A stretch of DNA of 64,000 nt from Chlorokybus atmophyticus. Lineage: Eukaryota; Plantae; Mesostigma and Chlorokybus algae. Of the stretch, positions 35,601-59,913 are shown piece after piece (position 1 is the first letter of the stretch; each line of letters begins with the position of its first letter). The translations under genes and the position numbers were made by a program. The stretch spans positions 391,439 through 455,438 of the forward strand of contig RHPI01003041.1 of NCBI GenBank assembly GCA_009103225.1, written 5' to 3'. Under the pieces are notes generated by a model. It was given only the letters and a program-made list of their open reading frames with translations, was not told the DNA's origin and did no database searches.

Positions 35601-37771
35601 GAGATCGAAGCTTGCCAAGCTTCCACCCAGGTCAACAGTTCATGCCGACAGCGCTGGAGTTGGCTCAATCACAGACAGAACCACCCCACCTGCTGAGTGA
35701 GTCAGAACTCATTGGCTTGATGGACACCAACGGCATCGGCACAGATGCCACAATGCATGACCACATCAAGACCATAACAAAGCGGTATGACACATTACCT
35801 TGGCGTGCATGGGCATGCATCCCTTGCGAGCATTTCTGTGCGCGCGTGTGTGTCTGTGCTGCTTAACTTACAAGTCTGTGCATTGCGCTTCAAAGAAACT
35901 ATGCAATCAAGAACAACAGGCAACAATTTACGCCTACTCCACTTGGTGAAGCCTTGGTGCTGGGCTACGATGCTATGGGTTACGACTTATGGAAACCAGC
36001 GTTGCGGGCTGCCATGGAGGCAGACATGAAGCGCGTTGGGGTTGGTTCCAAGACCAAGCAGGCAGCTGTGCTTGAGTGCCTGACGATAATGAAGCAGACC
36101 TTCTCTCAAGCCAATGCGCAGAAAGACAAACTGCTAGAGGCCATGACGCAGTTCTTTGCACCAGCAGCAGGGAATCATCATGCAAACAACAGCGGCCACA
36201 ATGGTGCTCAGGGCGGATCAGCCGGGGAGTTTGTGCGAGCATGCCCAATGTGCAATTGCAACTTCCTTCTCCGCCAGCGTCCCGAAAATGGCAAGTTCTT
36301 CATAGGCTGCTCAGGCTTCCCGCAGTGCAGAAACGTCCTTTGGCTGCCCACTGCAACGCTCGAAACGCAGGTACTAGTACGCAAGAAACCTGATCATGCA
36401 TGGGTTTCCTTGCCTGTTCTCATGCTGTGTTGTTCTTGTGCGTTGCGGTAGGTAACAACGGAGACTTGCGCAATGTGCCAACCAGCGCCTGTGTACATGG
36501 TGCGGTTCAAATTCAATCGAGTGAGCTTGCCGCTCAGCATGGGCCATATGGTCAATTATGTTGGGTGTGTCGGCTGCGATGGTCCGCTGCTTGACTTGTT
36601 TGAGATGTGCAACTATGGCGGCCCTGGTGGAGGAGGTGGCGGTGGCGGTGGTGGCGGCCCAGGTTTGTGTTAGCTGACCTCTGGGTGCCTATGATTTGGT
36701 TGGCAATGGAGCACATGTACGTTCAAAAATGCATACATGCACGCGTGACGCACACATGCAGGCACGCACAGAACAAAACACACTCACACATATGCCCACG
36801 TATGCTTGAACCCGCAGCACGTGTGCATGCACACACGCGCCCTGAAAGCGAACCTGATCTGTCATGCAGGCAATGGTGGAGGGGGCAACAGTCGACCGCC
36901 AGGAGGCTCCGCGCCATTTGCGGTTCCCACTCAGAACGCGGCTGCACGGGCCTCTGCTAGCACCAACCACCATAGACCTGCTCCTGCACCTGCACCCTCA
37001 ACAACTGCACCATCCCAGGCTCGGCCTGCAGCCCGCGCGCCACCCTTCAACCCTTACCAGCCCGCACCCAATCACGGCTTTCAACCCGCCAGCAACCTCA
37101 ACATGTTCCCGGGAGGTACACTGCGTGTAATGACTGCACAAGTACACATGTAATTGGGCTGGCTTGCACACTCACACGCATACGTACTCGGCAGGTGGGT
37201 ACCAGGCAGCAGCAGATGGTAGCGGCTTCCCCAGCAGCTCTCATCATCCAAGGTCTGGGCCTGGTTCAGCGAGGAGAGGCGGTCAACAAGAGACTGGCAA
37301 CAGAGGCACGGCTCGCCGTGGCGCGCAGCCCACAGGACACAGTGCGATCCCGCACTGCAACTGCGGCACACCTGCAACAGAACGCACTGCCAACACAGCC
37401 ACCAACCCCAACCGAGTTTTCTACACGTGCAACGTGTGCCACTATTTCCAGTGGAGAGACGAACTTGGCAATGCAGGTGTGTGTATGTGTATGCTCTTCA
37501 TGCTTGCTCGGAAGGGGGGGTCAACTGCTTGTGGGCTGAAGTGTATGCATGCATGCTTCCAGCCAGGAGCAACGCGGCAACGGGTGCAAGCAGAAATCGC
37601 AGCGGCAGCCAAAGCGCGGCACGCGGAGCGCGAGGTAGAGGGCGGGGAAGAGCGGGGAAGGCGAGGGGAGGAGCTGGTCGCGCCTCGGCGTCCGCATCAT
37701 CGGGCTGCTTCAAGTGTGGGGAGCAGGGCCATTTCGCCAGTGGTTGTCCCAATCAGCACAACTTTATGTGA
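32655..37771 (+). CDS. TOP3A: DNA topoisomerase III alpha
   Basis: [17 protein letters not shown] (TOPRIM); [12 protein letters not shown] ([12 protein letters not shown] region, spliced); [22 protein letters not shown]; [17 protein letters not shown]; [11 protein letters not shown] (catalytic Tyr); [13 protein letters not shown]; C4 zinc ribbons; GRF finger (CNCGTPA...[14 protein letters not shown]); terminal CCHC knuckle [14 protein letters not shown]. An upstream targeting exon is not excluded. Confidence 0.95.
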
Positions 37772-38666
37772 GCAAACGAGGCACACAATACCAACATGCA
37801 CCATGCAGAAACTGCAGTCACTCATCCATACTGTATAGTACTAAAAGCCCGTTGATCACATCTGTAGCAATTGAAGCTGAATGCACATGCCTGACAGCAT
37901 GCGCCGAATGGATTATCCACTCTCATATTTTGATGTTAACCTTCAACCATGCTGTTCCGGGAGATGCGTTGCATGCAGCCAAGCCTGGCAGGCAGGGTGA
38001 GGGCGCCAAGGTCTGCGTGCTGAAGCATGTGCATGTGTGCATAGGAATGCACTTCCAAGGTAGGTCCTGGTAAACATACTCTGCATGGTGCAGCAACCCC
38101 ATGTGTTGAGCACAGCCATGTTGATGTGTGGACATTGTCAGGTCCATGTCATCAACGGAACATGCAGGTGCGTTGCTAGGGTTACCTCAATGTTGGAAAT
38201 GTGCTTACAATTACTTGTCACTATGACAAAGCTTTTGTAAGTGCAATGTCTGAGTAACCAACCACATTTTGCGCGGATACCACCATCCAGAGTACAGCAT
38301 TATTGCAATGGTACAGCTGGCAGAACCAAGTGTACTGTCAATGAGGTTTGACAACTGTGGTGCAGCAGAGTAGGTACAGCCTGCACCTACAGAACAATAC
38401 TGGCTACTGCACTTCGCGCAAAGTTGGCCTGCTGCTTGGTGGTTGGTAAGTGTCGTGGCAGCTTCAATGTTCATCAAAAGGGCGTTGCTCTCTGTCCAGA
38501 AGATGGACAAGCTGTGATTGAAAGATGCACAAAGCAGTCAAGCACATCTGATGACGATGTTGGGCGGAGTTGACATATTGCTGCTGAGTGTTACTACCCA
38601 TAATATCCGTGCGCAATGCAGTTGATGCGCTCAACTACATTGGGCGTGGCCGGTGATTTGGACATA

Positions 38667-43000: not shown

Positions 43001-44695
43001 GATGACGACGAAGACAACGGAAGCCTTTACGCCGTGTTCACCCTTTTCACCTCCACGCCGCCGCCACCCACCCCGACAGCCACATGCACAACGACAAGCT
43101 TAAAACGCCGTCTATGCCGTGAGCTATGCTCACTGAGCTCTCTTACGGCCGGCAAGTGTTGGCAAGTCGCCGAAGGCAATCGGCAGCCTCCCTGCAGTGG
43201 CTGCCCACTATTGTGCAGACAGTATCGGTCGTGAGCGAGGCTAGCAGCCGGATTCTGTCGTGATACCTTCCGGCAGGCAGCGGTTGGCATCGCCAGTCAG
43301 TAGGTCAAAAAGTCCGGGTGGACTTGTGGCTTGGCTGCTGCGGGAAGAGCGGCGGACAAAAAGTTCCCGGGGGATCTTTTTCTCCGGCCGGAATCTCTTT
43401 CTTCCAGCGGAATCTTCCCTGTTGACAGGCGAACCTGGCTGGCAGTTGCATCTCTGTCGGTGTGGCCGCGGGAGACTGGGGGTTGCAAAATTTCCCGCGG
43501 ACACTGGCGTGCGTTACGCGCTGGTGAATCACACCCGATGTGACGCATGCAGCGACATGACATGTGCGTCGCAGTCGTGAGTCTGAGTGCAAGGCGTGAC
43601 GCACAGTTTGCCCCTTGTACAGTTTAGTGAACAAACAACTTGACAACGCTAACTGCCTAGGGGCCCTCAGTCTGACCCCAGCCCTTGCACTGAAGGCCCA
43701 TGGCAAGTCACGGTCACGAGCGATCAAGCAACAAGTGAGTATGGTTGAACATTTGATGGCATTATCGGATAGGCATTTAAAAGATATTAATGGCTTTATA
43801 ATAATAGGTATGGTTGTTGTGTGTACGAACGGAGTGGAGATTGCATTGGCATGTATAATGCAGACATATGTATCAATGGCACGATGCCATAGAGCAACAT
43901 CATTGCACGGTCATAAATAGCGCACGTGAAACAGCATAGCAAGCAATGAATAGTCCATTGCATTCACTCCCACAGTTGTCAGCATAAAGCATACCATAGT
44001 ATGTGTTCAGCAGTGCTACATATACATACTCCTACTTAGCACCCAACCCTTCCATGCCACACACAAATGCACTTTAAGCTATCCACAATTGTGCATTTGC
44101 ATAAAACTTAACGAATGTTGCATCTGCGGGGGAAGGCAACACCCTTTGGAAAACTTGGTTAAAGTGGTAAGTCAGGCTGTGAGGATGTCGCTTCCAAGGC
44201 TGAATCATGAGCATGTGTAGTGGTTATGAGGTGTGCTCACGCACAGGTTGCCCTTGAGCCCATGCGGCCTTGAGCATAATAAACCGCACAAAACATGAGT
44301 AAGGTAGCACAGAGCTGCTCATTGCTGATATTACGTAGCTTGGTTATGTCACATCGATGTGACACTATGTGTGAGCAGTGGTCACACATGCACGGAGCCG
44401 CTATAAGGCAGATCCAAATGCAAGATAATATCTCTTATTAGTCAATGTATCTACTAAGAAGAACGCAAGGAGCCTTACCATTGATGCGCTTGGTTGGAGT
44501 CCTTGGGCAGCAAGGGGGAGTACATATATAAGGGTGTTGCCAACAGTGTGGTGGGCAACGGAGCCCGAGTGGAGCTACTCTACTCACGTGTGTAGGATGT
44601 AGTTGCTGATACTTGGTATATGCTGTTGTACTTTCTTGAAGCCTGCTGCACACCCGCCGGGATAGGTATGTGTGTGGCGGATGACTGTACTCTTC

Positions 44696-45320
44696 TGTGC
44701 GAGGTATTGTTGCTGTTAATATTAAAACAAGTGTTGTTGTTTTTTCTCAAGTTGAAGTCTGCTCTACACCCGCCGGGACAGGCTATTATGGTAAGTGTGC
44801 AGTAGGTGTCACACATAAGGTGTGCGAGGTATTGTTGCTGTTAATATTAAAACAAGTGTTGTTGTTTTTTCTCAAGTTGAAGTCTGCTCTACACCCGCCG
44901 GGACAGGCTATTATGGTAAGTGTGCAGTAGGTGTCACACATAAGGTGTGCGAGGTATTGTTGCTGTTAATATTAAAACAAGTGTTGTTGTTTTTTCTCAA
45001 GTTGAAGTCTGCTCTACACCCGCCGGGACAGGCTATTATGGTAAGTGTGCAGTAGGTGTCACACATAAGGTGTGCGAGGTATTGTTGCTGTTAATATTAA
45101 AACAAGTGTTGTTGTTTTTTCTCAAGTTGAAGTCTGCTCTACACCCGCCGGGACAGGCTATTATGGTAAGTGTGCAGTAGGTGTCACACATAAGGTGTGC
45201 GAGGTATTGTTGCTGTTAATATTAAAACAAGTGTTGTTGTTTTTTCTCAAGTTGAAGTCTGCTCTACACCCGCCGGGACAGGCTATTATGGTAAGTGTGC
45301 AGTAGGTGTCACACATAAGG
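44696..45320. repeat. Perfect tandem array, 5 x 125 bp
   Basis: Units begin TGTGCGAGGTATTG at 44696, 44821, 44946, 45071 and 45196 and read identical. A diverged partial unit lies upstream (~44625-44670). Confidence 0.97.
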
Positions 45321-45701
45321 TAGGGGGAAAAGGCAGCCTCGCCAATTGTAGGGTTGGCGCTTGAAACCATGGTAGCCTTGTCGTTGTTGCTTTTTTTGGC
45401 CCTTGCTCCCGATGCCGATGTAACATGAGACTATCAGTAATAATCTTCGTTTGAATTGTACATACGTTGTTGCTTTTGATGAGCGTAACGTTATCTGTTT
45501 GTTTTATATGTCTAGTTCAAGTGTTATTGACTGCAGTGGGCTTGTGGCATTGTATGCATGTAAAAAAACCTTTGGTTTGTGAGGCGCTCTCGTGCTCTCT
45601 GTTCTACCCTTCCTTCCAATGCTTGCTGCTCCCCCCCCCCCCCCCCCCCCCCCCNGTTGTCGGCTTCGGACGCGTCTCCAGAAAGACGCAATGGAGATTG
45701 A

Positions 45702-46337
45702 ACGAAGTTGGCGAGCCTTGACAAGGGCTCCATGACGAGTTTTTTGCAGAGCAATGGAAAAACCTTAACTTGGCTAACACGTGTATGGCCCTGCTTTAAA
45801 TCAACCGTTATAAAGGATGAATTGCACGATCGTTTTTAAGGCAGAGTGTTTGAGCGGCAGAAGAAGATTGCTGATTTGTACAGGTTGAAAAAGAAAGGGC
45901 TAGTTGCAGAGTACCAAAAGGCTCGTGGTTTATGCAATACTGCGAGGGTTGCTTATTTTTCTTTTATCCTGTCGTCAATGACATTGTCGTTAGCTAATGC
46001 ATGTGGGGCTTGTAATCGGGTGGAGGGGCTTACAGTAACCATTCACACAAGCTCCCCAGCCTTTGGGGGCTTTTATACAGGTTGTAACAACACCACCGTC
46101 GCCGGTGATGCCCCTTCAATCCTCTACCCCAACACCCACACCGCCTATGACAAGCCTTTCAACGGCGTGGCCGCCACTGAGCAGAGAAGTGAAAGTCCCT
46201 CACATCAGTTTGATGTAACCTTTTATATAAAAAGTATATCAAATATATACCCCTCAATAATTAACTCACAACTAGACATCGACCCTACAGATAGGGTAGT
46301 AAGGAAATCTAGCGTGAGCCAATCACAGCTCAGATAA
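45702..46337 (+). pseudogene. Decayed LTR-retrotransposon (Ty3/Gypsy-like) Gag fragment with an in-frame stop
   Basis: One frame reads MTSFLQSNGKTLTWLTRVWPCFKSTVIKDELHDRF*GRVFERQKKIADLYRLKKKGLVAEY, resembling the Retrotrans_gag pattern (SxL.G.A.TW...W..FK..L...F...L..L.Q.G.V.EY). TAA at 45837-45839. The frame stays open to 46337 without further recognisable similarity. Confidence 0.5.
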
Positions 46338-46606
46338 GGTACCTATCGATAAGGTACCTATCGAAAGACACCTATCGTAAGGTACCCAACGAGATAGTGA
46401 CCACATTATATCAAATGTGACACTAAATAAGCTTGAAAAAGCGGTTCTACACCCATTGGGACTTATTTAAGCTATGATAAAGCATCATAGCCTTCAATAA
46501 GCGAGGAACCGTAGAAAAGAGGTATAAATAAGCATATATAAACACTTATTCATACAAAATGTGTTATTTAGGTAGCAATAATACCCCTATTATTGCTCCC
46601 GTTACA
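46214..46606. mobile_element. LTR-like segment bounded by TGTAAC...GTTACA
   Basis: 6-bp inverted termini. The right end reads TGTAACGGG on the minus strand, the same 9-mer that opens the TRIM LTRs at 61744 and 62190. TATAAATA at ~46522. No matching TSD, PBS or PPT found. Confidence 0.3.
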
Positions 46607-49600
46607 CAGGTAGTTGCATTAATGTGTCGTGTAAAACTTTGGTTTGACCCCCACGTAATGTTATTGTGCGCTTTGCTTGCTCCCCATGCATGGGCATTGT
46701 TGCTTTTTGACCTACATCCAAGCTTTTTAAATGCAACTCTTGTGTGTTATGTGCGCACGTGTGTTGAGTTTTTACGCCTAAACACGAAAACAATGCCTTT
46801 ATAAAATCACCATGTTTAAATGCAAGCTTCTGATTGTAAAGTAATGCGCGGTGTGAAATGGCAATCTATGCTATCGTTACGAGTTTGTTAAAAGATGAGT
46901 TTACCCGATTGGTATTATACGTGTTGCATCCACAAGCTGCATTGTGTGCCTGTGAATATGTAAGTATAATTCACATGAGCGCGAATCTTGTTATACACAC
47001 GTAACACTACATTGCCGGGTAACTGTACTTTAAACTTGTATCAAAACTCTATTAGATAACTTTAATAATTACAACTTCGATGCCATGTGGGTAACATGCC
47101 ACAATCATTGTAGATCATTAAAGATCACACTTCCTGGGAGAGCGTTCCTTACAATGTGTGCAATAAAAGAGAAATACTCGTTGAGTTGATCAGCTCATGA
47201 ATGTGACATGAAAAAACATGAGATGGTTATAGTGATGCAACCTACCACATGCTGCCATAAATAGGCGTGCCGTATGCAAGTTGCGCAATGTGCCATACTG
47301 TTATCACTTAACACTGAATTTGTCAATGTACACTTGTGTGAGTGTACATTCGTAAGGCCCTCCTTGGCACGGCCTTCGTGACCGAAAGTGTTGACATTAC
47401 ATGGCATATGATATATCAATAGACAGAACTCGGCGTGAGGTATCCATCAAAATATTGTGCATAAAATCTGGCGCGGTAAAGCGAAAGTTATGCTTGCTAA
47501 CGTACGACTACGTCGTTGGGGCTCGCTGTTGGGACCTGTTTTGATGACAAGACACTGTCATTTAAGTGGGCTTAACTTTTTGTAGCAAAGGAATCTTTCG
47601 ATGAGTAAACATTGAAAATTGTTCTGCTCGACGAGAGCAATCCAATGCGTTTATGATTTCCGCGAAATTTCCATACATGGAGCCGTATGGACGCTACAAT
47701 AGGCCTTGCATAACTGTACACAAAAATGTACATTGACTTTTCTTGATTTAAATGCTTATCGTAATGCAACTCTGCACACACAAGAAACCAGAAGGTCTAA
47801 AACTCTGTACACTTGTTGCGTTAACTGTTGTTGACATGTGTATCAAGTTTTAGCCTTAAATACCGAGTGATGCAAAAGATATGAGCGTGCCCACGAGGTG
47901 AGATAACTGTACACTTAAGTGTACATTTACGAACCTAATGTTAAAGGCCATCTTAAATTTGATAATGTGTGCACAAGTGAATATAATATGTGATTGTTAG
48001 CATGCATAAATGCTAATACAAGGTGAATAGCTTAACTATGCATGGTATAGCAAGTGCTATCTCATGAGTACCCACGGAGTCATGTTGTGTTGCAGGTTTT
48101 GTATGATTTTAATAATTGTGACGTCGATACACTATGAGCCAGTAATTCAATTAACTTTCTTGTGTTGGCCTTCCTATTCGGTTGTTAACTATTTATGACA
48201 GGACATGTATCAATACTATACATTTTGCAAACTCGTGGTCAAGGAAGGCCGATGTTACAAGTGTTGAAGATGGTACAATAGCCATCATAACGTTGAAAGA
48301 CGCTTTCCGCGCATAGAACGAAATTTACATGAGGACTCAACTGTTATCATGTATATAACTGCCAGCGATTGTGATGGTATCTTCAGAAAGTTTACGCATG
48401 CAAAGTCCTTTAACAAGCGAAGTATCATAGGGTACATCGTTTCGTCAATGATTGCAACAATTTGCTGTGACAAAAAACCGACTTGTTTAGTTGCTTATTC
48501 ACAACGAATGTCTTATGGCGAGCTCGTTGAGTCACATGAAACATGTATCAACACTTATCTGTTATCTTGTATATGGTTGCCAATGATCATCATGCTAGCT
48601 TATCAGAGTATAATATGAACGCAATGTCTTTACATAAGAGAAATATTGTGGGTTACATTGCTTGATCAATAATTGCAATGAATTACACCTACTGCGACAA
48701 ACTTTGACTTACATACGCCGTGATTTAGAGTCACAATGTTTGATGAGTTTACATATAAGCGAGACTTGGTAACAAACAGCGACATGTACATGGACGACAA
48801 CAAGTGATAACTCGTGAATATTAACCGTTTGTATTGGATAATCCTTTTCGTTGTTATGAAGCAACACATATCCTTGTGTACGAAAGCAATGTATAAGGAG
48901 TGCAAGTTTGCAATTTGGATAAGTGTTGGTTACTTTGCTTACATGCAATCATCAGTGCAAGTAAGATGTGAATTAACTATGATCGTACTTTGCGAATACC
49001 ATAATCAAAACATGGAGTGACACATGGTACCTTACATTGAATGCATCAAGTACATCATACATGATGTATATTGTACTTGGTGCATCCACAGTGTTGCCAA
49101 AGATGACCGGATCGGTTGCGGGCCACTTCGCGCGGGTGAATGTTTTATATCGTTGATGTAAAACGCATGATTGCATGTTCCTTGCGTTGCTACAATTTAT
49201 GCAAATGGAAACACATGCTATGCGTCATCACACACGTGACGTGTGTGAGATGACGATTAAAATGTGAGTAATTTTGTTGTAGTTTTTGCATAAGAATTGT
49301 TGATCAAAGATGTAATGGTCGCGTGTTGTATTCAGTATAACGTACCGCATATATATACGTTAAGCTCGCACTTGAAGCAATGTCAGTTATAGCGTTAATA
49401 TTTATTGGACAGTTGAACAAGACATCCTATTGAATAGCATAAGGTATATGTTGTACAGATGAATAAGACATGTTACTAAACAATATAGATTATGTATGTA
49501 CATATTTTATCCAACATGAACATGATTGCCCTGCATGCAGGCGACTAAGACTAGAACTAGTGTCACACTATTAATACTACTAGCGTTTGTGGTGTAGTGG

Positions 49601-52298
49601 AAGTTGTTGTGTCCATGTAATGTCGTTGCCAGTGTGAGCAACTACCGATATGAATCAAATAGCATTCTTTCCCATAAGATGATAAGCTTGTCTTTAAAAA
49701 CTCATTTTTTTTAACAAATGCAATACATTACCACAATGCGTACACGTGCGCGTGCGTAAGCGCTTGCCATGTGAGGGGCATTATCAATAATCGCTTTGAC
49801 ATGCTATACAATGACCCACGTGCATTGCGAACATTTTGCTGGAATCCACTTTTGTTTGACATTAGGAACAAGCTTTACGAAACCCTTCATCGAGCCTTCC
49901 GCAAATGCACGACGCCTCATATACGTTACCGATGACACTTATGACACTTATATATTTATGACGTGTGAGTATCATGACATGTTGACATCATTGGTTGATC
50001 GATACCACACCATCAAGCATATCCGAACAGCTTTATGCATGCAAGCTAGGGTTGTTGAGAACGCCGTTCCACGTATCTGGGCAGCGTAAAATATTGGTGT
50101 GTGAACAAAGTACACACGTGCCGTTGCACAAACAAGCGCTTACAACATCAGTGTTCGCCTGATTTACACAGATGTGATCTTGTTGTAACTTCTGTGCGTA
50201 CGAGTGTGTGTGCGTCTGCGTATGTCTGCATGGTGCTAAGTTTCACTAATGAACACATCATGATTCTTAGTGATTATGCAGTGTTCAAATGTGCCACCAT
50301 GGAGTTAGATGCGGCGCATGTGTAGAGTGATGTGCGTGCGTGCGCGCGCGCACATGCGCTTGCACACACATCTACGCAGCGCAAGCATATGAGGCCGTTG
50401 AGTACACATCCCTGTCAGACAAATTCATGAGTGCTGCAGGTTGCTGTCGACATTTACTGACTAATACCTGTCATTCTGTCTGTTTGCATTGTCACCAGCA
50501 CCGTTAGCCATGCCATGTTGCCCCTCAACACCGAAGCAGGCTGAACTGAACACAAGTACACACGTACCAGCCATGGTACCAACAACTACATTCACACTGC
50601 TGCAACGCAAAGAATAATGCATATGTGTGCGCGTGCCTGTGCGCAGGCATGCACACGCACACGCACACACACACATATGCACGACCACATGCACGCAGGT
50701 GCGCGCTCGCGTACACACGCACGTGTGAATGCGTGCGCGTGCCTGTGCGCAGGCACGCGCACATGCCCATCCTCATGTGACATGTGCACGCTCGCACGCA
50801 TCTGTGTGCGCGTGCACGTGTATGCACGCCCGCACCTATGTGAGTACATGTCAGACGCTTTACAACCATCCTCTACCTGGTTGAGAGCGGCCAGTTGTGC
50901 ACACAGCTAGCTATCCAGCGTCTGGTTGTGGCTTGTGCCTTTGCCGCTGCCAGGATTGGCTTGGTTGGAAGAAGCTGCCTCATTGAGAGTCACTGCGCCC
51001 GCGTTTGTCTGTGTATGCGCTCGAACGTGTACACGTTTAGGTGTGCGCGTGTGTGCACGTTGGTGTGCATTTGCACGTGTACACAAAACCTCATATTGCA
51101 TACATACACACAACAGCTCTCCCATCAACAGTATAGGTACTCACCCCACTCTCTCTCTCTCCATGTGCAGCTCTCAGCAACAACATGACCTGTCTGGCGC
51201 TGTCCATTCCTGCCCTCTTTGTCTGCGTGCGCGCCCGCAAGTACTGCGTGTGCGTGTGTGTAGGTAGGCTGAGAAGTTCTGTTTGTATAAAGAGTGAGGG
51301 GTAACTAATGGCATGCCCATGACTTGCATGGCACCGTACAGGCAATGTCGCACACGTAGGCACCGTCACAAGCACTCCGTCATGCACAGACCACCGGGCT
51401 CACTACTTAGCTAAGTCTCTCACGTAGCTGTGTGTACTTACAATGCAAAACGGCAATGTGTGTGTGTGCGTGCGCGTGTGTATTTACAATACAGGCGATG
51501 CAAGAAGTTGTAACATGCATGAGAGTGTGTTACATGCATGAGCGTGGGTGGGTGTGCACAATATGCAGGACACGCATGCGCATGCATTGGACATGCATTG
51601 AGACTGTAACCGCATCACATGCACCACGCGCACAGCATCGACCTTAAATCAGTAAACTACCGGGCTACCTTACTACACGGCTAGTCTACTCTACTCTACT
51701 GCCCCGACGTGGGGGGTGGGGGGGGTGGGGGGGGGAGGACAAAAGATGCAAAGGGGAACTGTGTAGGGAGCTTGTAACGCAGTGAAGTGATGCCGAACAA
51801 TGCGAATTAGTGGGGGGTTCGAATATGTACGGGTTCAGTCACCAGCCCACACACAGCGCCAGGAACATTTGGCCAGGGTGTGCATGTGTGCACAAAAGAT
51901 GGAGTGCTGGTAAGACTGCATGCAAGGGCGTGTGCACAAGCAATGTTAACAAGATTACATCACCACAAGCACATCATGTGCATATACGACCATGGTCAGC
52001 TTGCTTGCACATCAACTTGCACAAGGAGCGTCGAACATGTATTGCTAACGTACCCCCCCCCCCTTCAACAGCTCTAGTTCTCTCTTGCCACATCTTGAAC
52101 ATACACGCTGCTGGCGATTGAATTAGCCATCCGCCTGCTACAGCCATACCTATAGACCCATATCACAACGTTTGGTCAGTCGTGTCTCAAGCCCAGCCCA
52201 ACTGTGAACCTCAACTGCTTGCATTACAGCGGGGTGGACATAGTGTCGTGCATGTATATACCTACACACATACACGCAGTGCGAACACCACGTATTTC

Positions 52299-55200
52299 CT
52301 ATTGTTGAGGGCACACTTGTATCGCGCAAACAAGCGCAGAGTCCTTGCTAGCCACCAGGCTAATGGCAATGGCCTGGCCTGGTTTGTTCTGAACCACCAC
52401 ATTGAATGACTTCACCACCGCCGTGAAAGGGCCCTTTGCTGCCGCCACAATGTCAAAGTTGGGCAACACTGTTGCACCCTGCACGGGTGAACATGAATGC
52501 CATGTTAGTGTGATTATGTGATGAGTTGAAGAAAGTTGGGTCCAATGCATGTACCTGAAGTTTGATGTCGAACACGCGCTGGCCACTCTCATGCCAGTAA
52601 GTCTCAGCAAAGTGCAGCGTCACCGTATATGAGCCCGCTGTTGCTACCGGGACCGTGTAACTGCGCATCCAAATGTTGGTGTCTAATATTGCCTCACAGT
52701 TGCGCGTGCTACACAACAGCATGCGTTGATGCTGTATCATATGGAGCAGTCGTCACTGATGAGTGCATACAACACGCACAACATGACACCAAAGGGCAAC
52801 TGAAGCTGCGAGAATGGTCATGTTGATACCTGAAGCTGCCGTATCGGTATGACTTGTATAATTGTTCAAGCCCGACTTTGGCGCCCAGCATGGCGCAGCT
52901 ACCTGCACACGAAACACACACATCAACGCGACATGATGTTTGCGTGCTGACACGCGTTGCGTTGACGTTTGATCACCCAGAGATATTCACACCTGCACTG
53001 GCTGTTGCACCTCCCTGGTAGTAATCATCTGCCTTCCACACATCACCCGAGAAGTCTGCATCACCCGTGCACAAAGGCGTAAACAACTCGTCGACCCCAT
53101 TGCTACCACCCCATGAGACTGCAACACACCCTCCACAACTTCCATCACAAAATAGTGTTACGAACAACCACAACGTTGCTCACCAGTGAAGCCGCTGTTG
53201 CTCCCTGCCGATATCAGCACGCACCTTCCCGGAAGCTTCGGTGGAGGCGTCGGCATGATGAGGCGCGGGCTTGGCACTTGTCCCGGCGCAGCCAACTTCA
53301 TTGATAACCATGCACCAGATGCTGCACATTGATGGTGATGGTGATGATGATGTTGATGGTGGTGATGTTGTTGGTGTTGTTGATGATGATATTTATGATG
53401 GTGATGGTCTTACTTGTCAGCAGGGAATTTGGGCCTTGATAGGCAGCAGAGGAACAGTCGTATGCTTCGCCATAAGGCACTGTTGCCTGCCGCAGTTGCA
53501 TGATTGGTCATGCTGCGTTAGATAGCCCACACACAACACCATCATCACAGATAGACATATGCGTGTGCCCGCCTGTGCCCGCGTGTGCACGCATGCATGA
53601 GATGTTGTCTGCTGTCACATGTGAGCATGTGTGCGCAAGGACAGAATGCTTACATCAATCACAACATAATCGCAGCCTGTGCCGGGGCAGAAATCCTCAT
53701 CTGGGTCGGTGTGAATGTCGCGATACCGCTGCCCTCTTTGTCTGCACACAACCACAACAACCACAACTTGTCTCACAAACAATACACATCAACATTCGTG
53801 TTGGTGTCTTGCAGTGATTCAGTCGGCTTCAGGCAGCTTACTTGACTGTGACTACCAACAAGCCCCGTCCCACATCCCAGTAGTAAGCATTGGCGTTGCT
53901 GGCGCGTTGATTCGCGAGGGTGTTGGCTTGTGCAAGCTGCGCCAGCACGCCGTCCTGCGCATACATAACGCGTATGTGTGTTACACTTGTGCATTATGAG
54001 CACTGACGCACAACCATTCATGTTGGAGTGCGTGAGCATTTAAGTGTGCGCACGCGCGCGCGTACTGCACGAGTGCACAATGCGAGTACCAACCACATGC
54101 ATGCTTGCAGTCTTTGTCCTGCATGTTAGCAGCAACGTGATCACAAGTGGGTATGGTTGTTGATCAATGAATGTCAAAGCACGTACCGAGTAGAGGCCAA
54201 GGCCTCGCTGGACGGAGATTATGACTGTGTCTGGAGGGTAACAAACGCCCAGCTCCACCCACTCGCCCTGCAATGCAATACAAATTTGTGATGTGGTAGA
54301 GTGCCATATGCACAGTGTTTTGTTGCCTAGCATGTTCTGTATGAGACACAGGGACTCATACCTGATACGCATTGTCAAGCTGCAGTTGCAGCAGCTGTGG
54401 TGTTTGTGCATCGAAAACGAGCAGATACGACGCCCCAACCGACCTGTTAACATAGCCAGATTGGGGCCTGGCATTATGACATGATACCCTTGAGTCAATA
54501 CATGCACAGCGGTAAACTTTGAATAATGACCATATTGGCTGCCAGGTTCCGGCGTTGCCACTCAACACGAGCTCGCCGTCATTAATGTTGTCGCTGCTGA
54601 CTCTGTTGTTGAGTAACATGTGGAGAGAGTTGGGGTTGGCGCAAGGGCTGGACAAGCACTGGACCTGTTGCAGCGATGTTGGGCGCCAAGTTTCTTGTGG
54701 TACTCAGGGTCATGTTTATGAGTCACAAGGCAGCAGTGTGGTTGAACAAACTTGTAGTTACCTCTGCGTTGGCGTATGCTTGTGGGCAGATCAAGCCGTT
54801 GGCACCATCATTAATGCAGCCAGGAGCTTTGTAGAAGTTCCAGCTTAAGGGTAAGACTACTGCCTGCAAGCATATGTAAACAATCACGCACACGCACACA
54901 ATCAGGACCATAACCATGCATGTGTATGTACAGTACGCATGCAACCAAGCAGCACCACTTATATCTGACGGGGTCAATACGCATATATTGCTATAGATCC
55001 AGATGCATGCATATAGCGGGATGTGAATGAATCCCCAGGTATACGTACCCCTGCGTGTCCGGTCAATGAGCCGTCCGCATCATATATGTTGGTGGTCTTG
55101 CCTCCATCTGCCTGCATACGACATCAACACCGAGTCAACAATGCATACAAATCTGGCTTATGCTTGCGTGTGTAGTTCGTGTATGGGGCCAACGCGCAAA

Positions 55201-58200
55201 GTAACAAACACATGCATGCACTTACTTGAACATCTGAATTGCGTATATGAACGGGTGAGTTGACGAACTTGGCAGCCTGCAAACGCACACGTTTTTTGAC
55301 CAGACCTTGTCCATATATTTACAGGCTTGTAGTAGTGCACAGGAGTACCATCTCCTCACCCGCAGGTTTGTGCTTGTGTGCATGAAGAACACGTTGTAGA
55401 CGCGAGGCTCCAGCGGCGTGCACTGCGCTCCATTGTAGTTGATGAAAGTACACCTGACACAGACACGACATAAGCGCACGCACATAAGATGAAGTTCATT
55501 CTGGCCCTCAGAAACAACAACACCTCATAAGACTTCGTAACTCACCCATCCAGGCTTTGCGGCCCGTCATAAACTCTGTACCCCACAATAGAGTTAGACA
55601 CAGACGTGTCCACAGGGTTTCCCGGGTTGCCGCTTCTCCCAACAAACACGTTGCCGACCAGCATTGATAAACCGGGGTCCGGGTGGCCTCCCCTCCCTGC
55701 TATCTGCATGAAACATGAACAAATAAACAACCACAACCACAACCATGAGTGAGCTTTGTGTCTGTGAGCAGAGTAGTTGGGTGTATATGTATACACACAG
55801 ACACACAGACGTGTATGTGTGATGTTTGTGATGTAGTGTGTATTGTTCATCATTGTATGGCGCATCATGCATACTTGAACTCCTTCAGGGGTGTCAGCCC
55901 AAATGCATCTTGTCAAGGTTAGCTTATAGAGTCTGCCCCAAAGCCCTGAGTTAACAAGCTTCCATCCCTGCAATACGACAACAGTTATCCATACACAGTC
56001 ATAATCAACACAACGATAACAACAACATTAACACAACACAACAACAACACATGCTCATATAACAGCTCTTTGCAGCAGCAGCAAGAGCTGTCATACACAC
56101 CCATTGCTTACTTGGAAGTCCTGTATGTTGGGTGCGGTCCCGTCGCTGGGTGCCAACATGGCCAAGTTGGCGTGTTTGAACTGGTAGCCAACATCGTTAT
56201 CATCAAGTATGCCGCTCTCCACATTGAGCCCTCTCCTGCAGCAATAACATGTTGGTTTGCATGTTGATAGCATTGGTAATAAGACTCGAGTACTATCACT
56301 CACGCGCATGAGTGAGCCACATTGCGGGTGAATCCCGCAAACTTGGCTGCGGCGGGGTTTAATGAGCCGTAAAGCCCGAGAAGGCCTGATAAACCCTCGA
56401 CAGCGCCTCGTGTCTGTCATGCAGAGCCAAGCAAGTTGTTGTTAATGAATAATGTGTAATATGTTGTGTTACATCACAGACATGTGTTATGCGACAGCAA
56501 GGACTGAGGTTTACATTGACACGTACCTGGAACCAAAAGCCTGTGCCTTGGCAGCCGGAGGCTACGTTGTTGTTGAACACGTTGTTGCCATCTGCCATGT
56601 AAACGTTTTTGTCATGGTGAAAAGAAGTACAGGGGAGAAAACAGAAAACCCACACATACAAACACAAGCACGAAAGCAGGAAATAAGCAACAAGACAAGC
56701 AAAACGACAGCAAGGTGAATGATCAGGTAACGTAAGAATAAGGCAACAAACATCGCACAGGCATGAAAACACAACAGGTATTTTGAAAGGGTAGGATACT
56801 TAGACTGCCAACAACCATGATACCAACCATTATATATATACATCCACATGCGATGCGTCACTCACTTGTGATCCAAAAAGCGGACACCGCGATGGCATCC
56901 GCATCACTCCCCAGTCTTGCTCCCGTATTCTATCAAAACACACCAACACAGTGTTGTTGTTTGAAACACGTGCAACAATACTCGCACACACACCATAGTT
57001 GATGCAGCACTTGCCTTGGTCATGGTGTTGATGGCGAGGTTTCTGGTCAAGACATTGCCAAACTCTGCGCCATCCTCCAGCAGGAACGCGTGGCCTTGAG
57101 TGTTGAAGGCAACATTGCCACTCAACGCAACACCCTAGAAGCAGAGTGGTTGAAGTGGTTGTGACATGATGCATTTATGATTCTATCAGATGAGTACAAG
57201 TTATAAGGCAGTACTATCCCACTTACGTCAAATGATTTGAGCGTGTGACAAAGGCTCTAGGAGTGTCGTGTGATGCATGCATGTGGATGATCATGGAGTG
57301 AGTAAACTGTTGCAGGTTATAACACCCCATTCACGGCATCCCACCTGAGTGCCGTGTATGACGTAAGCTCTGAAATTGGAGTTTGAGGCCACGCAGTCGC
57401 GTACGTAAGTGCCTGTTGGGACGCGTCCGCACACATGGAAATGAATTGGATACCTGACGGGCAAAATAAAAGAGGGTCAAAGGGGATGTGTTATGCGCTT
57501 AATGACGGAACCCAGATTTGATTGTTGCAAACAGACTTGGCAAAAGCGTCGCCTTGACCGCCATTGATGACTGCCACCGCTTGGACGTGCACGGCTTTGA
57601 AACCCTGTTGTTGGTTTGGACACGTGTCCGGCTATCAGTGTTGAAGCTGTACAGTTCTACAGCACAACGGTGACAACTGACACACGTACACACCCGCACA
57701 TACCATGTATGCACCCGCACATACACACAACACATGCGTGCGGACACTTATGCATACGTGCGTGCGTGCGCACATGCGCGCGCATGCACGCACACGTGTG
57801 CACGCCTACAATCGCACATGTATGCATGGTGGTGCGCAACAAGGCTGTGCGCGGTATGTCCACAGTTGAACATCACCTTTACGAAAATGGTATGGCAGCC
57901 AATGGGAGCCCCGCCAACAATCTCAATACTGCGAGACAGCAGCGCAACCTCCGCCCTCTCATCCACACCATAGGTGACCTGTTTCAAGCCAACAACAACA
58001 TGGCCATTGTGGGGGACCATCTACCAGCAACATCAACAGTAAACAATTACAGCTTACCTGCCCATAGTGCATCCACTTGAGCGGGGCATCGACCACGATA
58101 GTTTGTCCTGCGATGCTTGCAATCTTCCGCACTTCACTCTACACAAGTACCACACAAATTGACAGCAGTTGGATTGCAAGTTTGGGTAGAAGTTGTGCAC

Positions 58201-59913
58201 ACTGAGTGCACCATAATGTCACACATCGTTCACTCGCCTGCGTGTAAGCATAATCGGTGCTGCCTATCACAACAGCATCGCCAGCTTTCCAGGAGCTGTG
58301 CAAACATGCAGACAGTTGATACTGGCAAAACCAGGACACAACATGACAATAGTGTCCTTGTTGTGTCACAAGCACATAAACAAAAGCTCACCTCACGCTG
58401 CCAATGACGGCAACAGATTTGGTGCCCACCGATGCAGTGGCTGCGAGCTTTGTCCAAGACTGCGCCAAGCCCTTTGCTCCATGCAGCTCCAAAGTGCCAC
58501 CTTGTAGACGTTATATTGGTTGTGACTGTTCGTATGCAAGGACACACACGCTCGCACACATGCATGAATATAGCCACTGTGGATGTGGCACATGCACATG
58601 CGCGTGCGTGCACACACGCACGCAGGCTCTCAAGTGCGTGCATACGTACACACAAGCGCATGCACGCAAGTGCGTAGGAGCGTGCATGCGCGCATGCACG
58701 CTCCTACGTGCGTGCATGTGTGTGTATGCACACACACATATTAGAACATATAAGACTGTCACCTGGTAGCACTGCCAGGACCTGCGAGCCGGCGATACCC
58801 GGCACCAGGGCCGTGCCGGCAAGGTTTACGGTGAGCTTGCCAACGAAGGGGCAGCCTTCACCTCCAACGTGGAGTGCACCCTGTCCATGACGATTAGTAG
58901 TGGTGAATGCTGTCACTGAGTGTGTTGTGGTCACACAGTGGCATAGTCTCACTTGGACTGCGATGAAGTCTGTCGTGAGAGTGGCGGGCGCGTCCTTGAA
59001 TACAAGAACAGCGCCGGCAGCGATTGTAATGCCACTGTTGATTGTAACCTATTGAGTGACAGAGTTATAAGACACTGTTTCACAACGTAAGCAGCAAGAA
59101 GGCATGTGTAAACTGCGAAAGAACTAGGGTGAAAATGTGTGACTGTGTACTTGTGACACGCATTGTCACACAAGTACACAGTTGTTGGCGCGTACCTCTT
59201 CGACATCAAATAGCACATTCTGGCCTGACTTCAGTGTCACCCCACCAGAGATGCTCTTGCTGCAGAAAGTCGGTCAGTGTTACTGATCCAAGCATTGCAT
59301 GCTGACACAGGCAGTGCAGCACTGTTACTGTTTTGTGTACAATACTCACCTTTTGAACAGTTGCGACCATGGCGTGAGCGTCTTGTACGCCGAGTCAAAG
59401 GGACACAGTCCTGAGACTACGTGAAGACAAGAGAAGAAGAGCACAACAAGCACACCACACGCAAGCATGGTACTGTGCACCATTGCAGAGACACACACAG
59501 TGGAACACACTGGAAGGACTGTGGTGATGGCACTGTCCAGCGTCACACTGTGCTGTATGGTTACACAACAGTTCAGAGACACACGCACACACACGTAAAG
59601 CTGTGCACACAGTCTTCAAGTAGTACCACAGGCCCAGGTGCTTTTATATGTGTCACACAGGCAGGTTGTGTTTTCACCATGACTGCAACGTAGGCAGATC
59701 AGACCATGGCAACTTCCCACTGGAAAGAAATCCAAGTATAACAGAATCAATCAATACCAACGATGGCATACTATCAAAAGTAATGCTCTACACTAGCCCT
59801 GCTGCTTGAAAGCTACTCTTGGACTATGCAAACAGTATGATTGCCTTACCTTGGGTGTAATACCAGGCACAAAGTGAGTGCAAACGTTGGGTTAGAGCAG
59901 TGTAGTCCATCAT
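52299..59913 (-). CDS. CEMIP/TMEM2-like G8-domain, parallel beta-helix protein with a C-terminal malectin domain (~25 exons)
   Basis: Exons in order: VTLKSGQNVLFDVE; GALHVGGEGCPFVGKLTV; GGTLELHGAKGLAQSWTKL; WKAGDAVVIGSTDY; GVDERAEVALLSRSI; RYPIHFHVCG...VIHGTQ; GHAFLLEDGAEFGNVLTRNLAI; NNVASGCQGTGFWF; GYRVYDGP; then LYKSYRYG...YTVTLHFAETYW...GQRVFDIKLQ...VLPNFDIVAAA (malectin). The start codon and extreme 3' end are tentative. Confidence 0.85.
58673..58708. repeat. Perfect 36-bp palindrome in an intron of the G8 gene
   Basis: CGTAGGAGCGTGCATGCGCGCATGCACGCTCCTACG equals its own reverse complement. Confidence 0.95.

What the first reader, a model, noticed from the sequence alone, without database searches (positions are those of the whole stretch)
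52299..59913. CEMIP/TMEM2-like putative glycanase fused to a malectin domain in a green alga
Motif order follows the animal hyaluronan-degrading proteins CEMIP/TMEM2 as I recall them: G8 domain, GGxLELHG...SWT.L, W..GD..V..STDY, D.RAEV.LLSR, YPIHFH, F..EDG.E..N, G...TGFWF, YDGP. It then passes through a Pro-rich linker into a malectin carbohydrate-binding module (LHFAE..W...GQRVFDI). Green algae are not known to make hyaluronan themselves (although some chloroviruses do), and land-plant malectins are mostly on receptor kinases. The fusion therefore suggests an undescribed wall- or mucilage-remodelling or glycan-sensing enzyme. Function and novelty are inference.
Basis: partly seen in the sequence, partly recalled or inferred. 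Interest (0 to 1): 0.72.

Follow-up and report, generated by a model that had tools for sequence, protein, structure and literature searches.

The report
Algal CEMIP-like enzyme with malectin tail
The early-branching alga Chlorokybus expresses a 32-exon gene for a secreted protein that joins the core of the animal CEMIP/TMEM2 "hyaluronan-degrading" proteins to a sugar-binding malectin module; the fusion is real and rare, but the core family is common and its chemistry is still unknown.

Summary
Pfam finds G8, CEMIP beta-helix, CEMIP_X and malectin.

The window is Chlorokybus atmophyticus (JGI Chlat1). The gene is public model Chrsp63S07090 (P0001, 969 aa).

Spliced contigs from two independent studies join the malectin exons to the beta-helix exons through GT-AG introns, in one open frame. 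They also correct the public model at four places. The result is 32 exons and 1037 aa, with two GC-AG introns.

The product has a signal peptide and no other hydrophobic segment. It matches the solved TMEM2 ectodomain (phmmer 9e-43; Foldseek 2.7e-41, TM 0.67). It lacks the animal GG lectin inserts.

The core groups with oomycete proteins (100/100), apart from the bacterial homologues. None of the 120 best homologues carries a malectin. One distant bacterial protein does, and the scan already reported a two-malectin paralogue elsewhere in this genome.

Most likely it is a secreted polysaccharide-cleaving enzyme targeted by its malectin. Activity and substrate are inferred. Even for TMEM2 no active site is assigned.

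It is a new variant of a known kind, of moderate interest.

The parts
52299..59483 (-). Complete coding region: 32 exons, 3114 nt, 1037 aa plus stop. There are 31 introns of 68-274 nt, 29 GT-AG and 2 GC-AG.
   Evidence: Spliced contigs of runs X1 and X2. Frame and splice-site reconstruction. tblastn of the public model P0001.
52067..52298 (-). 3' UTR (approximate end)
   Evidence: The X1 contig extends 183 nt beyond position 52250 of the laid stretch (table 8; the record is 3008 nt long and its position 2825 lies at 52250).
59409..59483 (-). Signal peptide, residues 1-25 (MVHSTMLACGVLVVLFFSCLHVVSG, then L)
   Evidence: This is the only strongly hydrophobic 19-residue window of the protein (Kyte-Doolittle 2.39 at residues 5-23; next best 1.67). 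The cleavage site is read from the sequence and was not predicted with a dedicated tool.
58392..59378 (-). G8 domain (N-terminal turns of the beta-helix), spread over five exons and ending in GGTLELHG...SWTKL
   Evidence: Pfam PF10162: 45.1 bits on P0001; exon hits. The last exon (58500-58392) is confirmed by RNA through the 239-nt overhang of the X1 contig. The four exons upstream of 58763 rest on P0001 and open frames only.
55546..58295 (-). CEMIP-type right-handed beta-helix core, with STDY, DERAEV, YPIHFH, EDGxE, FWITN, TGFWF and YDGP
   Evidence: Pfam PF24606: 152.7 bits. phmmer to TMEM2 8c6i: 9e-43. Foldseek: 2.7e-41. Exons fixed by the RNA contigs.
58139..58237 (-). GC-AG intron. The public model avoided it and so lost VIGSTDYAYTQ.
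   Evidence: The loose end of the X1 contig at 58140 reads ...GATTATGCTTACACGC joined to 58138.
56930..57014 (-). Second GC-AG intron. The public model used a donor at 57054 and so lost VLTRNLAINTMTK.
   Evidence: Contig piece 57015-57133 in X1 and X2. Reconstruction. The restored residues align with TMEM2 ...NTLFHNLGLLT.
53480..54586 (-). CEMIP_X domain, the beta-sandwich region after the helix (approximate limits)
   Evidence: Pfam PF24605: 56.6 bits on P0001 653-794. It aligns with TMEM2 up to chain residue 1077.
53236..53486 (-). Linker. It includes an exon missing from the public model (53414-53486) and the Pro-rich stretch PGQVPSPRLIMPTPPP.
   Evidence: Joints 53485/53653 and 53055/53184. 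pLDDT is below 50 at P0001 798-814.
52302..53235 (-). C-terminal malectin (CBM57-type) domain, spread over five exons
   Evidence: Pfam PF11721: 97.2 bits. phmmer to Xenopus and human malectin: about 3e-10. Foldseek to human malectin 9ikp: TM 0.70 normalised by the target.

Best explanation
This is an expressed nuclear gene of Chlorokybus atmophyticus. It encodes a soluble secreted protein of about 1037 aa. The domain order is signal peptide, G8 plus CEMIP/TMEM2-type right-handed parallel beta-helix, CEMIP_X domain, Pro-rich flexible linker, and a C-terminal malectin (CBM57-type) module. Shown here: the gene structure, the single spliced transcript, the domain identities, the fold match to TMEM2 and malectin, and retention of most family-conserved residues. 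Inferred: the beta-helix cleaves, or otherwise processes, an extracellular polysaccharide on its concave face, as related beta-helix lyases and hydrolases do. Also inferred: the malectin acts as a carbohydrate-binding module that tethers the enzyme to a wall, mucilage or foreign glucan, as in bacterial glycosidases that carry the closest malectin relatives. The substrate is unknown and is unlikely to be hyaluronan.
For: - One transcript: contigs of 3008 nt (X1) and 2040 nt (X2), from two studies, lie on the locus with 25 joints. The 14 locus joints printed all have CT..AC ends on the + strand, which is GT..AG on the gene strand. They run from the malectin exons to the beta-helix exons.
- One open frame: the joined exons give an uninterrupted 1037-codon frame.
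- Domains: Pfam on the public model P0001 gives G8 1.2e-11, CEMIP_beta-hel 1.6e-44, CEMIP_X 3.3e-15 and Malectin 1.3e-27.
- Solved relatives: TMEM2 ectodomain 8c6i at 9e-43 by sequence. By fold, Foldseek gives 2.7e-41 and TM 0.67 on a model with mean pLDDT 84.6.
- Next fold hits are capsule lyases, phage depolymerases and tailspikes, then malectins and malectin-like modules of GH2 enzymes and FERONIA/ANXUR.
- Conservation: 117 of 161 columns conserved at 80% or more among 32 homologues keep the consensus residue in P0001. The RNA-guided model restores 6 of the 7 gapped ones. DERAEV, YPIHFH, EDGxE, FWITN, GFW and YDG are all kept.
- Secretion: a hydrophobic N-terminus and no other hydrophobic segment.
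- The malectin keeps the aromatic ligand-contact positions that can be aligned (Tyr89, Tyr116, Phe117 to Trp) (PMC13335976).
- Its closest relatives are appended to GH16, GH3, GH81, GH5 and GH12 enzymes.
Against: - No enzymatic activity has been shown for any non-animal member of the family (searches found none).
- For TMEM2 itself no active site could be assigned, and the soluble ectodomain showed no hyaluronidase activity (PMC10206443; PMC10276149 by title).
- Some family-conserved residues differ in this protein: R255K, C284A, N465T and E513R in P0001 numbering.
- Glu87 of Xenopus malectin is Tyr here. Tyr67 and Asp186 could not be aligned.
- The first four exons were not covered by the laid reads.
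Confidence: 0.55

Rival explanations
1. The protein is a non-catalytic secreted glycan-binding, matrix-organising or sensing protein. On this reading the beta-helix is a scaffold or binding surface, as some authors now argue for human TMEM2. Together with the malectin it cross-links or recognises wall or mucilage polymers without cutting them.
For: The TMEM2 ectodomain had no detectable hyaluronidase activity and no assignable active site (PMC10206443). Human TMEM2 is described as 'not a catalytic hyaluronidase' (PMC10276149, title). The protein has two potential sugar-binding parts and no proven catalytic residues. It has 24 cysteines and a soluble secreted form.
Against: A set of acidic and histidine motifs is conserved from bacteria to animals and kept here: DERAEV, YPIHFH, EDGxE. 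That pattern is more typical of an active site than of a scaffold. The nearest other folds are polysaccharide lyases and depolymerases. Appended CBMs, such as malectin here and PA14/GLEYA in bacterial homologues, usually accompany enzymes.
Confidence: 0.3
2. The fused gene, or its beta-helix part, was acquired ready-made from a bacterium and later gained introns.
For: Most homologues in the databases are bacterial. A bacterial soil-metagenome protein, P0197, has a CEMIP beta-helix plus two malectins. The closest malectin relatives found are in bacterial-type multidomain glycosidases. Earlier scan notes report bacterial-type malectin genes in this genome.
Against: The core sits in a 100/100-supported clade with two oomycete proteins and two transcript-like sequences. 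That clade lies next to Dictyostelium plus a metazoan-like CEMIP and apart from all labelled bacterial rows. P0197 is only 25% identical in the helix and lies on a very long, distant branch. The gene has 31 spliceosomal introns. A bacterial origin of the malectin module alone is not excluded.
Confidence: 0.07
3. The fusion is an artefact: two neighbouring genes, a mis-assembly, or a chimeric contig.
For: Contigs across two genes can occur. The runs are only guessed to be RNA. One unrelated chimeric joint through a CA-rich repeat was seen (53767 to 55726).
Against: Two contigs from two studies give the same 15 or more joints with canonical intron ends across the junction. There is no stop codon between CEMIP_X and malectin. 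The public gene model predicts the same fusion independently. Intron-free contigs cannot be genomic DNA.
Confidence: 0.02

Closest known systems
Animal CEMIP (KIAA1199/HYBID) and TMEM2 (CEMIP2); solved TMEM2 ectodomain, PDB 8c6i
   Same: They share the G8 region, the CEMIP beta-helix and the CEMIP_X domain, with the same conserved motifs. phmmer gives 9e-43 and Foldseek 2.7e-41 with TM 0.67. Both are secreted or extracellular, with a lectin-type domain at the C-terminal end.
   Different: The algal protein has no GG/ILEI lectin-like domain inserted in the helix and none at the C-terminus (no PF15711 hit; alignment gap). A malectin sits there instead. It has no transmembrane segment. Identity to TMEM2 is only about 20%. 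No hyaluronan is known in this alga.
Bacterial and protist 'G8 domain-containing proteins' (minimal G8 + CEMIP beta-helix, with or without CEMIP_X), e.g. Pythium insidiosum PINS_up000316 and Dictyostelium purpureum DICPUDRAFT_98088
   Same: They have the same minimal core architecture at 27-38% identity. Oomycete proteins are the closest named relatives. Some bacterial members also carry a C-terminal sugar-binding module (PA14/GLEYA).
   Different: None of the 120 best hits has a malectin. None has a described function.
Bacterial soil-metagenome protein P0197 (CEMIP beta-helix + two malectins)
   Same: It shows the same kind of fusion. Its malectins are 35-39% identical to the algal one.
   Different: It is intronless and sits in a bacterial gene neighbourhood. 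The helix is only 25% identical, has no G8 or CEMIP_X hit, and branches far away. It is probably an independent fusion.
Malectin (ER lectin of animals) and CBM57-type malectin modules of bacterial glycosidases; malectin-like ectodomains of plant CrRLK1L kinases
   Same: PF11721 scores 97 bits. The fold matches human malectin at TM 0.70 (target-normalised). The aromatic positions Tyr89 and Tyr116 are kept, and Phe117 is Trp here.
   Different: It is not a membrane-anchored ER protein and not part of a kinase. Glu87 is replaced by Tyr. It sits as a C-terminal module of a secreted enzyme-like protein, which is the bacterial usage.
Paralogue in the same genome reported earlier by this scan (s1-078975: CEMIP-like core + tandem malectins)
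   Different: It carries two malectins and has 21 exons, on another piece of the genome.

Membership tests
CEMIP/TMEM2 family (Pfam G8 + CEMIP_beta-hel + CEMIP_X) | G8 domain (PF10162) above the gathering score | tested here: met
   45.1 bits against a cut-off of 22.9 on P0001. Exon 58707-59048 alone scores 30.2 bits.
CEMIP/TMEM2 family (Pfam G8 + CEMIP_beta-hel + CEMIP_X) | CEMIP beta-helix (PF24606) above the gathering score | tested here: met
   152.7 bits against a cut-off of 27.3. Two single exons score above the cut-off (39.9 and 45.4 bits). A third scores 26.2 bits, just below it.
CEMIP/TMEM2 family (Pfam G8 + CEMIP_beta-hel + CEMIP_X) | CEMIP_X domain (PF24605) after the helix | tested here: met
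   56.6 bits against a cut-off of 27.6.
CEMIP/TMEM2 family (Pfam G8 + CEMIP_beta-hel + CEMIP_X) | Fold of the solved TMEM2 ectodomain | tested here: met
   AlphaFold2 model of P0001 has mean pLDDT 84.6. The top Foldseek hit is 8c6i_A, E 2.7e-41, TM 0.67 by query, rmsd 4.2.
CEMIP/TMEM2 family (Pfam G8 + CEMIP_beta-hel + CEMIP_X) | GG/ILEI lectin-like domains (one inserted in the helix, one C-terminal), typical of the animal proteins | tested here: not met
   There is no PF15711 hit on P0001, whereas the metazoan-like P0010 has one. TMEM2 chain residues about 127-382 and beyond 1091 have no counterpart. It is therefore a member of the wider family but not of the animal CEMIP/TMEM2 subtype.
CEMIP/TMEM2 family (Pfam G8 + CEMIP_beta-hel + CEMIP_X) | Hyaluronan depolymerisation | not testable with these tools
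   This needs biochemistry. It is disputed even for TMEM2 (PMC10206443).
Malectin / CBM57 | Malectin domain (PF11721) above the gathering score, and the malectin fold | tested here: met
   97.2 bits against a cut-off of 23. Foldseek to human malectin 9ikp_A gives TM 0.70 by target and rmsd 3.6. Xenopus malectin gives 0.62-0.68.
Malectin / CBM57 | Ligand-contact residues of Xenopus malectin (Tyr67, Glu87, Tyr89, Tyr116, Phe117, Asp186; list from PMC13335976) | tested here: inconclusive
   In the phmmer alignment, Tyr89 and Tyr116 are kept, Phe117 is Trp and Glu87 is Tyr. Tyr67 and Asp186 lie outside the aligned stretch.
Animal ER malectin (membrane-anchored lectin of N-glycan quality control) | Stand-alone malectin domain with a C-terminal membrane anchor | tested here: not met
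   The domain is the C-terminal module of a 1037-aa secreted protein. There is no hydrophobic segment after the signal peptide.
Plant malectin / malectin-like receptor kinases (CrRLK1L, LRR-malectin RLKs) | Transmembrane helix and cytoplasmic protein kinase domain | tested here: not met
   There is no kinase hit in Pfam. The stop codon follows directly after the malectin.

The most novel reading that the evidence does not exclude
Chlorokybus belongs to an old eukaryotic CEMIP clade. In its lineage this clade replaced the lectin partner by malectin modules, in this gene and in at least one paralogue, to act on an alga-specific wall or mucilage polymer. The protein is small, soluble and free of N-glycan sequons, and it keeps all family-wide acidic and histidine motifs. 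It could therefore be the tractable member that finally reveals the catalytic activity and active site of the CEMIP/TMEM2 family.
Probability: 0.25. Interest if true: 0.6.

Novelty: new variant of a known kind. Interest (0 to 1): 0.4.

Why it matters
CEMIP and TMEM2 matter medically (hyaluronan turnover, cancer, deafness), yet their catalytic mechanism is unresolved and the activity of TMEM2 is disputed. A simple, soluble, expressed algal relative has all family-wide motifs and a recognisable substrate-targeting module. That makes it a practical handle for asking what this beta-helix does chemically. For plant evolution, it shows that in the earliest-branching streptophyte algae the malectin domain serves as a mobile carbohydrate-binding module on secreted enzyme-like proteins, before its use in land-plant receptor kinases. 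The gain is modest: the core family is common, the gene model is already public, and the scan had already found a sister fusion.

Tried and rejected
It was resolved only by adding contig-length constraints and the public model as a guide.
- A single-exon search of the 1.84-billion-protein library gave only 31 weak hits (best 1e-6). It did deliver the public model P0001 and the algal homologues.
- The ESM Atlas feature search found only G8/CEMIP clusters, none with malectin. Only clusters of 50 or more members are searched, so this shows little.
- Literature searches were blank for malectin plus 'G8 domain', for Chlorokybus plus CEMIP, and for functional work on 'G8 domain-containing protein' outside animals. 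One search with loose terms was uninformative.
- No catalytic residues could be taken over from TMEM2, because none are assigned.
- The reading of a ready-made bacterial transfer of the fusion was rejected on the trees.
- The separate-transcripts reading was rejected on the contigs.
- No tRNA genes are in the window.
- No complex prediction was attempted, because no binding claim is made.
Full report
**1. What is in the sequence**

The region 52299-59913 contains no long ORF.

Each stop-to-stop segment was scanned by reference against Pfam-A, with these hits:
- G8 (PF10162) in 58707-59048 (4.6e-7) and weakly in 58391-58510.
- CEMIP_beta-hel (PF24606) in 57294-57476 (4.9e-10), 56907-57134 (1.1e-11) and 56362-56799 (7.7e-6).
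- A faint CEMIP_X hit in 54043-54561.
- Malectin (PF11721) in 52456-52752 (2e-12) and 52302-52619 (1.1e-3).

One exon alone already finds the solved TMEM2 ectodomain, 8c6i.

**2. Organism and public gene model**

The 76-aa exon 56907-57134 was searched against the 1.84-billion-protein representative library. The best hit was P0001 (969 aa). Its source name is jgi/Chlat1/7593/Chrsp63S07090, Chlorokybus atmophyticus in EukProt.

tblastn of P0001 on the window gives exon-sized blocks at up to 100% identity from 59483 down to 52302. In a global alignment with my model there is no mismatch outside four gaps. So the window comes from that genome, and the gene is already a public but unnamed model.

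Whole-protein Pfam on P0001 gives G8 1.2e-11, CEMIP_beta-hel 1.6e-44, CEMIP_X 3.3e-15 and Malectin 1.3e-27.

**3. One transcript or two**

Two public runs from two studies (X1, 2021; X2, 2013; both 'organism A') hold 30% and 21% of the sampled words of the 8-kb locus. That share is what exons alone would give.

Laid on 52250-58249, one 3008-nt contig (X1) and one 2040-nt contig (X2) lie on the locus in many pieces. There are 25 joints, of which 15 are printed. Fourteen of those belong to the gene, and all have CT..AC ends on the + strand, which is GT..AG for the minus-strand gene. The fifteenth (TT..TA, 53767 to 55726) is a repeat-mediated chimera.

The same contigs cover the malectin exons (52250-52477, 52554-52660...) and the beta-helix exons (..., 56111-56234, 57015-57133). 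Intron-free contigs cannot be genomic DNA, so the gene is transcribed and spliced.

Joining the exons from 55703 down to the stop gives an uninterrupted 532-codon frame. It runs from the end of the helix through CEMIP_X and the linker into the malectin. The fusion is therefore in the mRNA.

**4. Gene model**

I used three sources: the printed joints, the contig-length bookkeeping, and canonical splice sites. For the joints not printed I also used P0001 as a guide. The result is 32 exons, a 3114-nt CDS and 1037 aa. The 31 introns measure 68-274 nt.

Two introns are GC-AG (donors at 58237 and 57014). The first is read directly from the loose end of the X1 contig.

The public model differs only by four omissions:
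- VLAVLPGGTLE
- VIGSTDYAYTQ
- VLTRNLAINTMTK
- a 33-aa linker segment that includes a whole exon, 53414-53486

Three of these restore family-consensus motifs: G.L..HG, V..S.D and N....NL. All eight motifs and the Pro-rich stretch are in the model, in the stated order.

The four exons upstream of 58763 were not covered by the laid stretch. They rest on P0001 and open frames.

Those tools received single exons by reference or the public protein P0001. The joined sequence was built only inside scripts. It served for the frame test, the comparison with P0001, the motif and composition counts, and as one row of the first local tree. That tree was then repeated with P0001.

**5. Anatomy of the product**

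The N-terminus (MVHSTMLACGVLVVLFFSCLHVVSG, then L) is the only strongly hydrophobic window. No later segment looks like a membrane anchor or GPI signal. The protein is therefore most likely soluble and secreted. This is read from the sequence; no signal-peptide predictor was available.

P0001 aligns with TMEM2 (8c6i) in three stretches, with E 9e-43 for the whole sequence: the G8 region, the helix around YPIHFH and EDGxE, and then continuously to TMEM2 chain residue 1077. Two TMEM2 regions have no counterpart: the first lectin-like (GG) domain inserted in the helix, and the C-terminal second GG domain. There is also no PF15711 hit.

An AlphaFold2 model of P0001 was built with a 54-row alignment. 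It has mean pLDDT 84.6 and pTM 0.75. The low-confidence stretches lie at the linker (798-814) and at a loop (408-422).

Foldseek against the PDB ranks as follows:
- TMEM2 first: E 2.7e-41, TM 0.67 by query, rmsd 4.2.
- Then beta-helix polysaccharide lyases and depolymerases: Klebsiella K1 capsule lyase and phage tailspikes.
- Then, for the C-terminal part, human and Xenopus malectin (TM by target 0.62-0.70), FERONIA/ANXUR ectodomains, and the malectin-like modules of bacterial GH2 enzymes.

**6. Is the core intact**

In the alignment of P0001 with 32 full-length homologues, 161 columns are conserved at 80% or more. P0001 has the consensus residue in 117 of them. Seven are gaps caused by the mis-spliced public model, and the RNA-guided model restores six of these.

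All conspicuous acidic and histidine motifs are kept: DERAEV, GxH, (R/K)YPIHFH, HGT, GHxF.EDGxE, D....FWITN, GFW, AHS, AD(N/T) and YDG. This argues that whatever the family does, this protein still does it.

It cannot be turned into a catalytic-residue test. [quoted passage not shown] It also found no hyaluronidase activity or hyaluronan binding for the soluble ectodomain (PMC10206443).

**7. The malectin**

The domain matches Xenopus and human malectin at about 3e-10. The ligand-contact residues listed for Xenopus malectin are Tyr67, Glu87, Tyr89, Tyr116, Phe117 and Asp186 (PMC13335976).

In the alignment, LYQTERY pairs with LYKSYRY and AEVYF pairs with AETYW. That gives Tyr89 and Tyr116 kept, Phe117 to Trp, and Glu87 to Tyr. 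Tyr67 and Asp186 lie outside the aligned part. An aromatic sugar-binding platform is therefore likely, with a specificity that need not be that of the ER lectin.

I also searched the 5.8-billion-protein set with the malectin region alone, restricted to proteins of comparable total length. The closest relatives are 35-48% identical. They are almost all multidomain proteins of bacterial type in which malectin accompanies GH16, GH3, GH81, GH5, GH12, GH92, GH71, peptidase S8 or PQQ-dehydrogenase domains. In those proteins malectin is used as an appended carbohydrate-binding module.

**8. How common is the fusion, and where does the core come from**

A whole-protein search gave 418 homologues with E of 1e-5 or lower. 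Among the 120 best, none but P0001 itself carries PF11721. A few bacterial ones carry PA14/GLEYA instead.

The best non-self hits are only 33-36% identical:
- P0035 and P0036 each sit alone on a transcript-like contig of unknown organism.
- P0037 is from Pythium insidiosum.

Green-algal members of the core family exist in Closterium (P0002) and Haematococcus (P0013).

One other CEMIP-helix plus malectin protein turned up: P0197, with two malectins. It is intronless and lies on a soil-metagenome contig beside bacterial-type genes for a sulfatase, a mandelate racemase-like enzyme and a guanylate cyclase. Its helix is only 25% identical to the algal one.

The trees agree with each other:
- In the quick tree, Chlorokybus falls in a fully supported clade with the two oomycete proteins, P0035 and P0036. 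P0197 sits on a very long, distant branch.
- In the careful tree built with P0001, the same clade has 100/100 support. It lies on the same side as Dictyostelium plus a metazoan-like, ILEI-bearing CEMIP, of a branch with support 87/94. All labelled bacterial rows lie on the other side.

So the core is not a recent bacterial import, and the bacterial fusion is most likely independent. The trees are unrooted and sparsely labelled. They cannot decide between vertical descent with losses and transfer among eukaryotes. The origin of the malectin module on its own remains open.

**9. What the scan had already noted**

Earlier notes on the same genome describe the following:
- A CEMIP/TMEM2-like gene with tandem malectins on another piece (s1-078975, followed up as real).
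- A secreted G8/beta-helix protein with a different C-terminal module (s1-079644).
- Malectin fused to GH81, GH16-X8, PQQ dehydrogenases and a metalloprotease.

I could not test these here. If they hold, this gene is one member of a small paralogous group, and malectin is a promiscuous module of the Chlorokybus secretome. The scan therefore found this kind of fusion before, on other DNA of this genome.

**10. Most likely mechanism**

Shown: a secreted modular protein whose N-terminal 830 residues form a TMEM2-like beta-helix plus CEMIP_X. Its last 150 or so residues form a malectin on a flexible Pro-rich tether.

Inferred from the general behaviour of right-handed beta-helix carbohydrate enzymes and of CBM-bearing glycosidases:
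- The helix cleaves or modifies an extracellular polysaccharide on its concave face.
- The strongly conserved EDGxE, DERAEV and YPIHFH residues are the best candidates for the site.
- The malectin concentrates the enzyme on its polymer.

Chlorokybus grows as packets of cells in mucilage (background knowledge). Remodelling of its own wall or mucilage is therefore a natural target. Digestion of foreign microbial glycans in soil is an alternative. Hyaluronan is unlikely. I put this reading at about 0.55 and a non-catalytic lectin or scaffold role at about 0.3.

**11. Novelty and verdict**

The core family is known and common, and the gene model is public. No paper in the searchable library mentions malectin together with the G8 domain, or Chlorokybus together with CEMIP. 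I found no functional study of a non-animal member.

The malectin fusion is a rare architectural variant.

I class it as a new variant of a known kind, with moderate interest (0.4). Its main value is as a tractable model for the unresolved biochemistry of the CEMIP/TMEM2 family, and as an example of malectin used as a CBM in an early streptophyte.

**12. An unexplained detail**

The 1037-aa product has no N-x-S/T sequon at all. Its composition predicts 7.4, and only 0.02% of 5000 shuffles reach zero.

Homologues from oomycetes, Dictyostelium, other green algae and bacteria sit at expectation. Only the nearest relative, P0035, is also low (3 against 9.5). The single sequon of the public model is created by one of its mis-spliced junctions.

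Noticed in passing
window 52299-59483 (-), whole product: The secreted 1037-aa product has no N-x-S/T glycosylation sequon, although 7.4 are expected from its composition (0.02% of 5000 shuffles reach zero). Most homologues sit at expectation. Only the nearest relative P0035 is also depleted (3 against 9.5). This may reflect selection against N-glycans on a protein that itself carries a malectin, but it is unexplained.
   Followed up: partly
window 58139-58237 and 56930-57014 (-): Two GC-AG introns. At both, the public JGI model chose another GT donor and lost conserved residues (VIGSTDYAYTQ and VLTRNLAINTMTK). The model also misses VLAVLPGGTLE and a whole linker exon (53414-53486).
   Followed up: yes
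window 53322-53413 (-): A 92-nt intron made largely of ACC/ATC-type triplet repeats. It stays open in two frames (His-rich, or Thr/Ile/Asn-rich) and could be mistaken for a low-complexity coding linker. The reads tool skipped it as a repeat.
   Followed up: yes
window 53747-53767 and 55726-55748: Other contigs of runs X1 and X3 (depth 46-87) touch the locus only through short CA-rich repeats (CACAAGCACAAG...). They give a false joint 53767 to 55726 with TT..TA ends. This is a repeat-mediated chimera, not an isoform.
   Followed up: partly
window 44001-50000: An AT-rich stretch (GC 0.38-0.45, against about 0.50-0.55 elsewhere) lies downstream of the gene. The ORF at 45846-46337 has no Pfam hit.
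   Followed up: no
window 16163-16699 (+), 8616-9182 (+), 23004-23654 (-), 37164-37838 (+): Neighbouring open segments hit ordinary eukaryotic families: EXS (1.1e-34), CCCH zinc finger, Pyr_redox_2 and GRF zinc finger. No other carbohydrate-active gene was seen in the window.
   Followed up: partly
L001:3300-6785 (+): A bacterial soil-metagenome protein, P0197 (1161 aa), has a divergent CEMIP beta-helix plus two malectins. It lies beside genes for a sulfatase, a mandelate racemase-like enzyme and a guanylate cyclase. This looks like an independent instance of the same fusion idea.
   Followed up: partly
L003:204-3287 (+) and L002:159-2879 (+): The two closest relatives, P0035 and P0036, sit on transcript-like single-gene contigs of unknown organisms. 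P0035 has about 160 unassigned C-terminal residues after CEMIP_X. P0036 runs off its contig right after CEMIP_X, so either could carry a further module.
   Followed up: no
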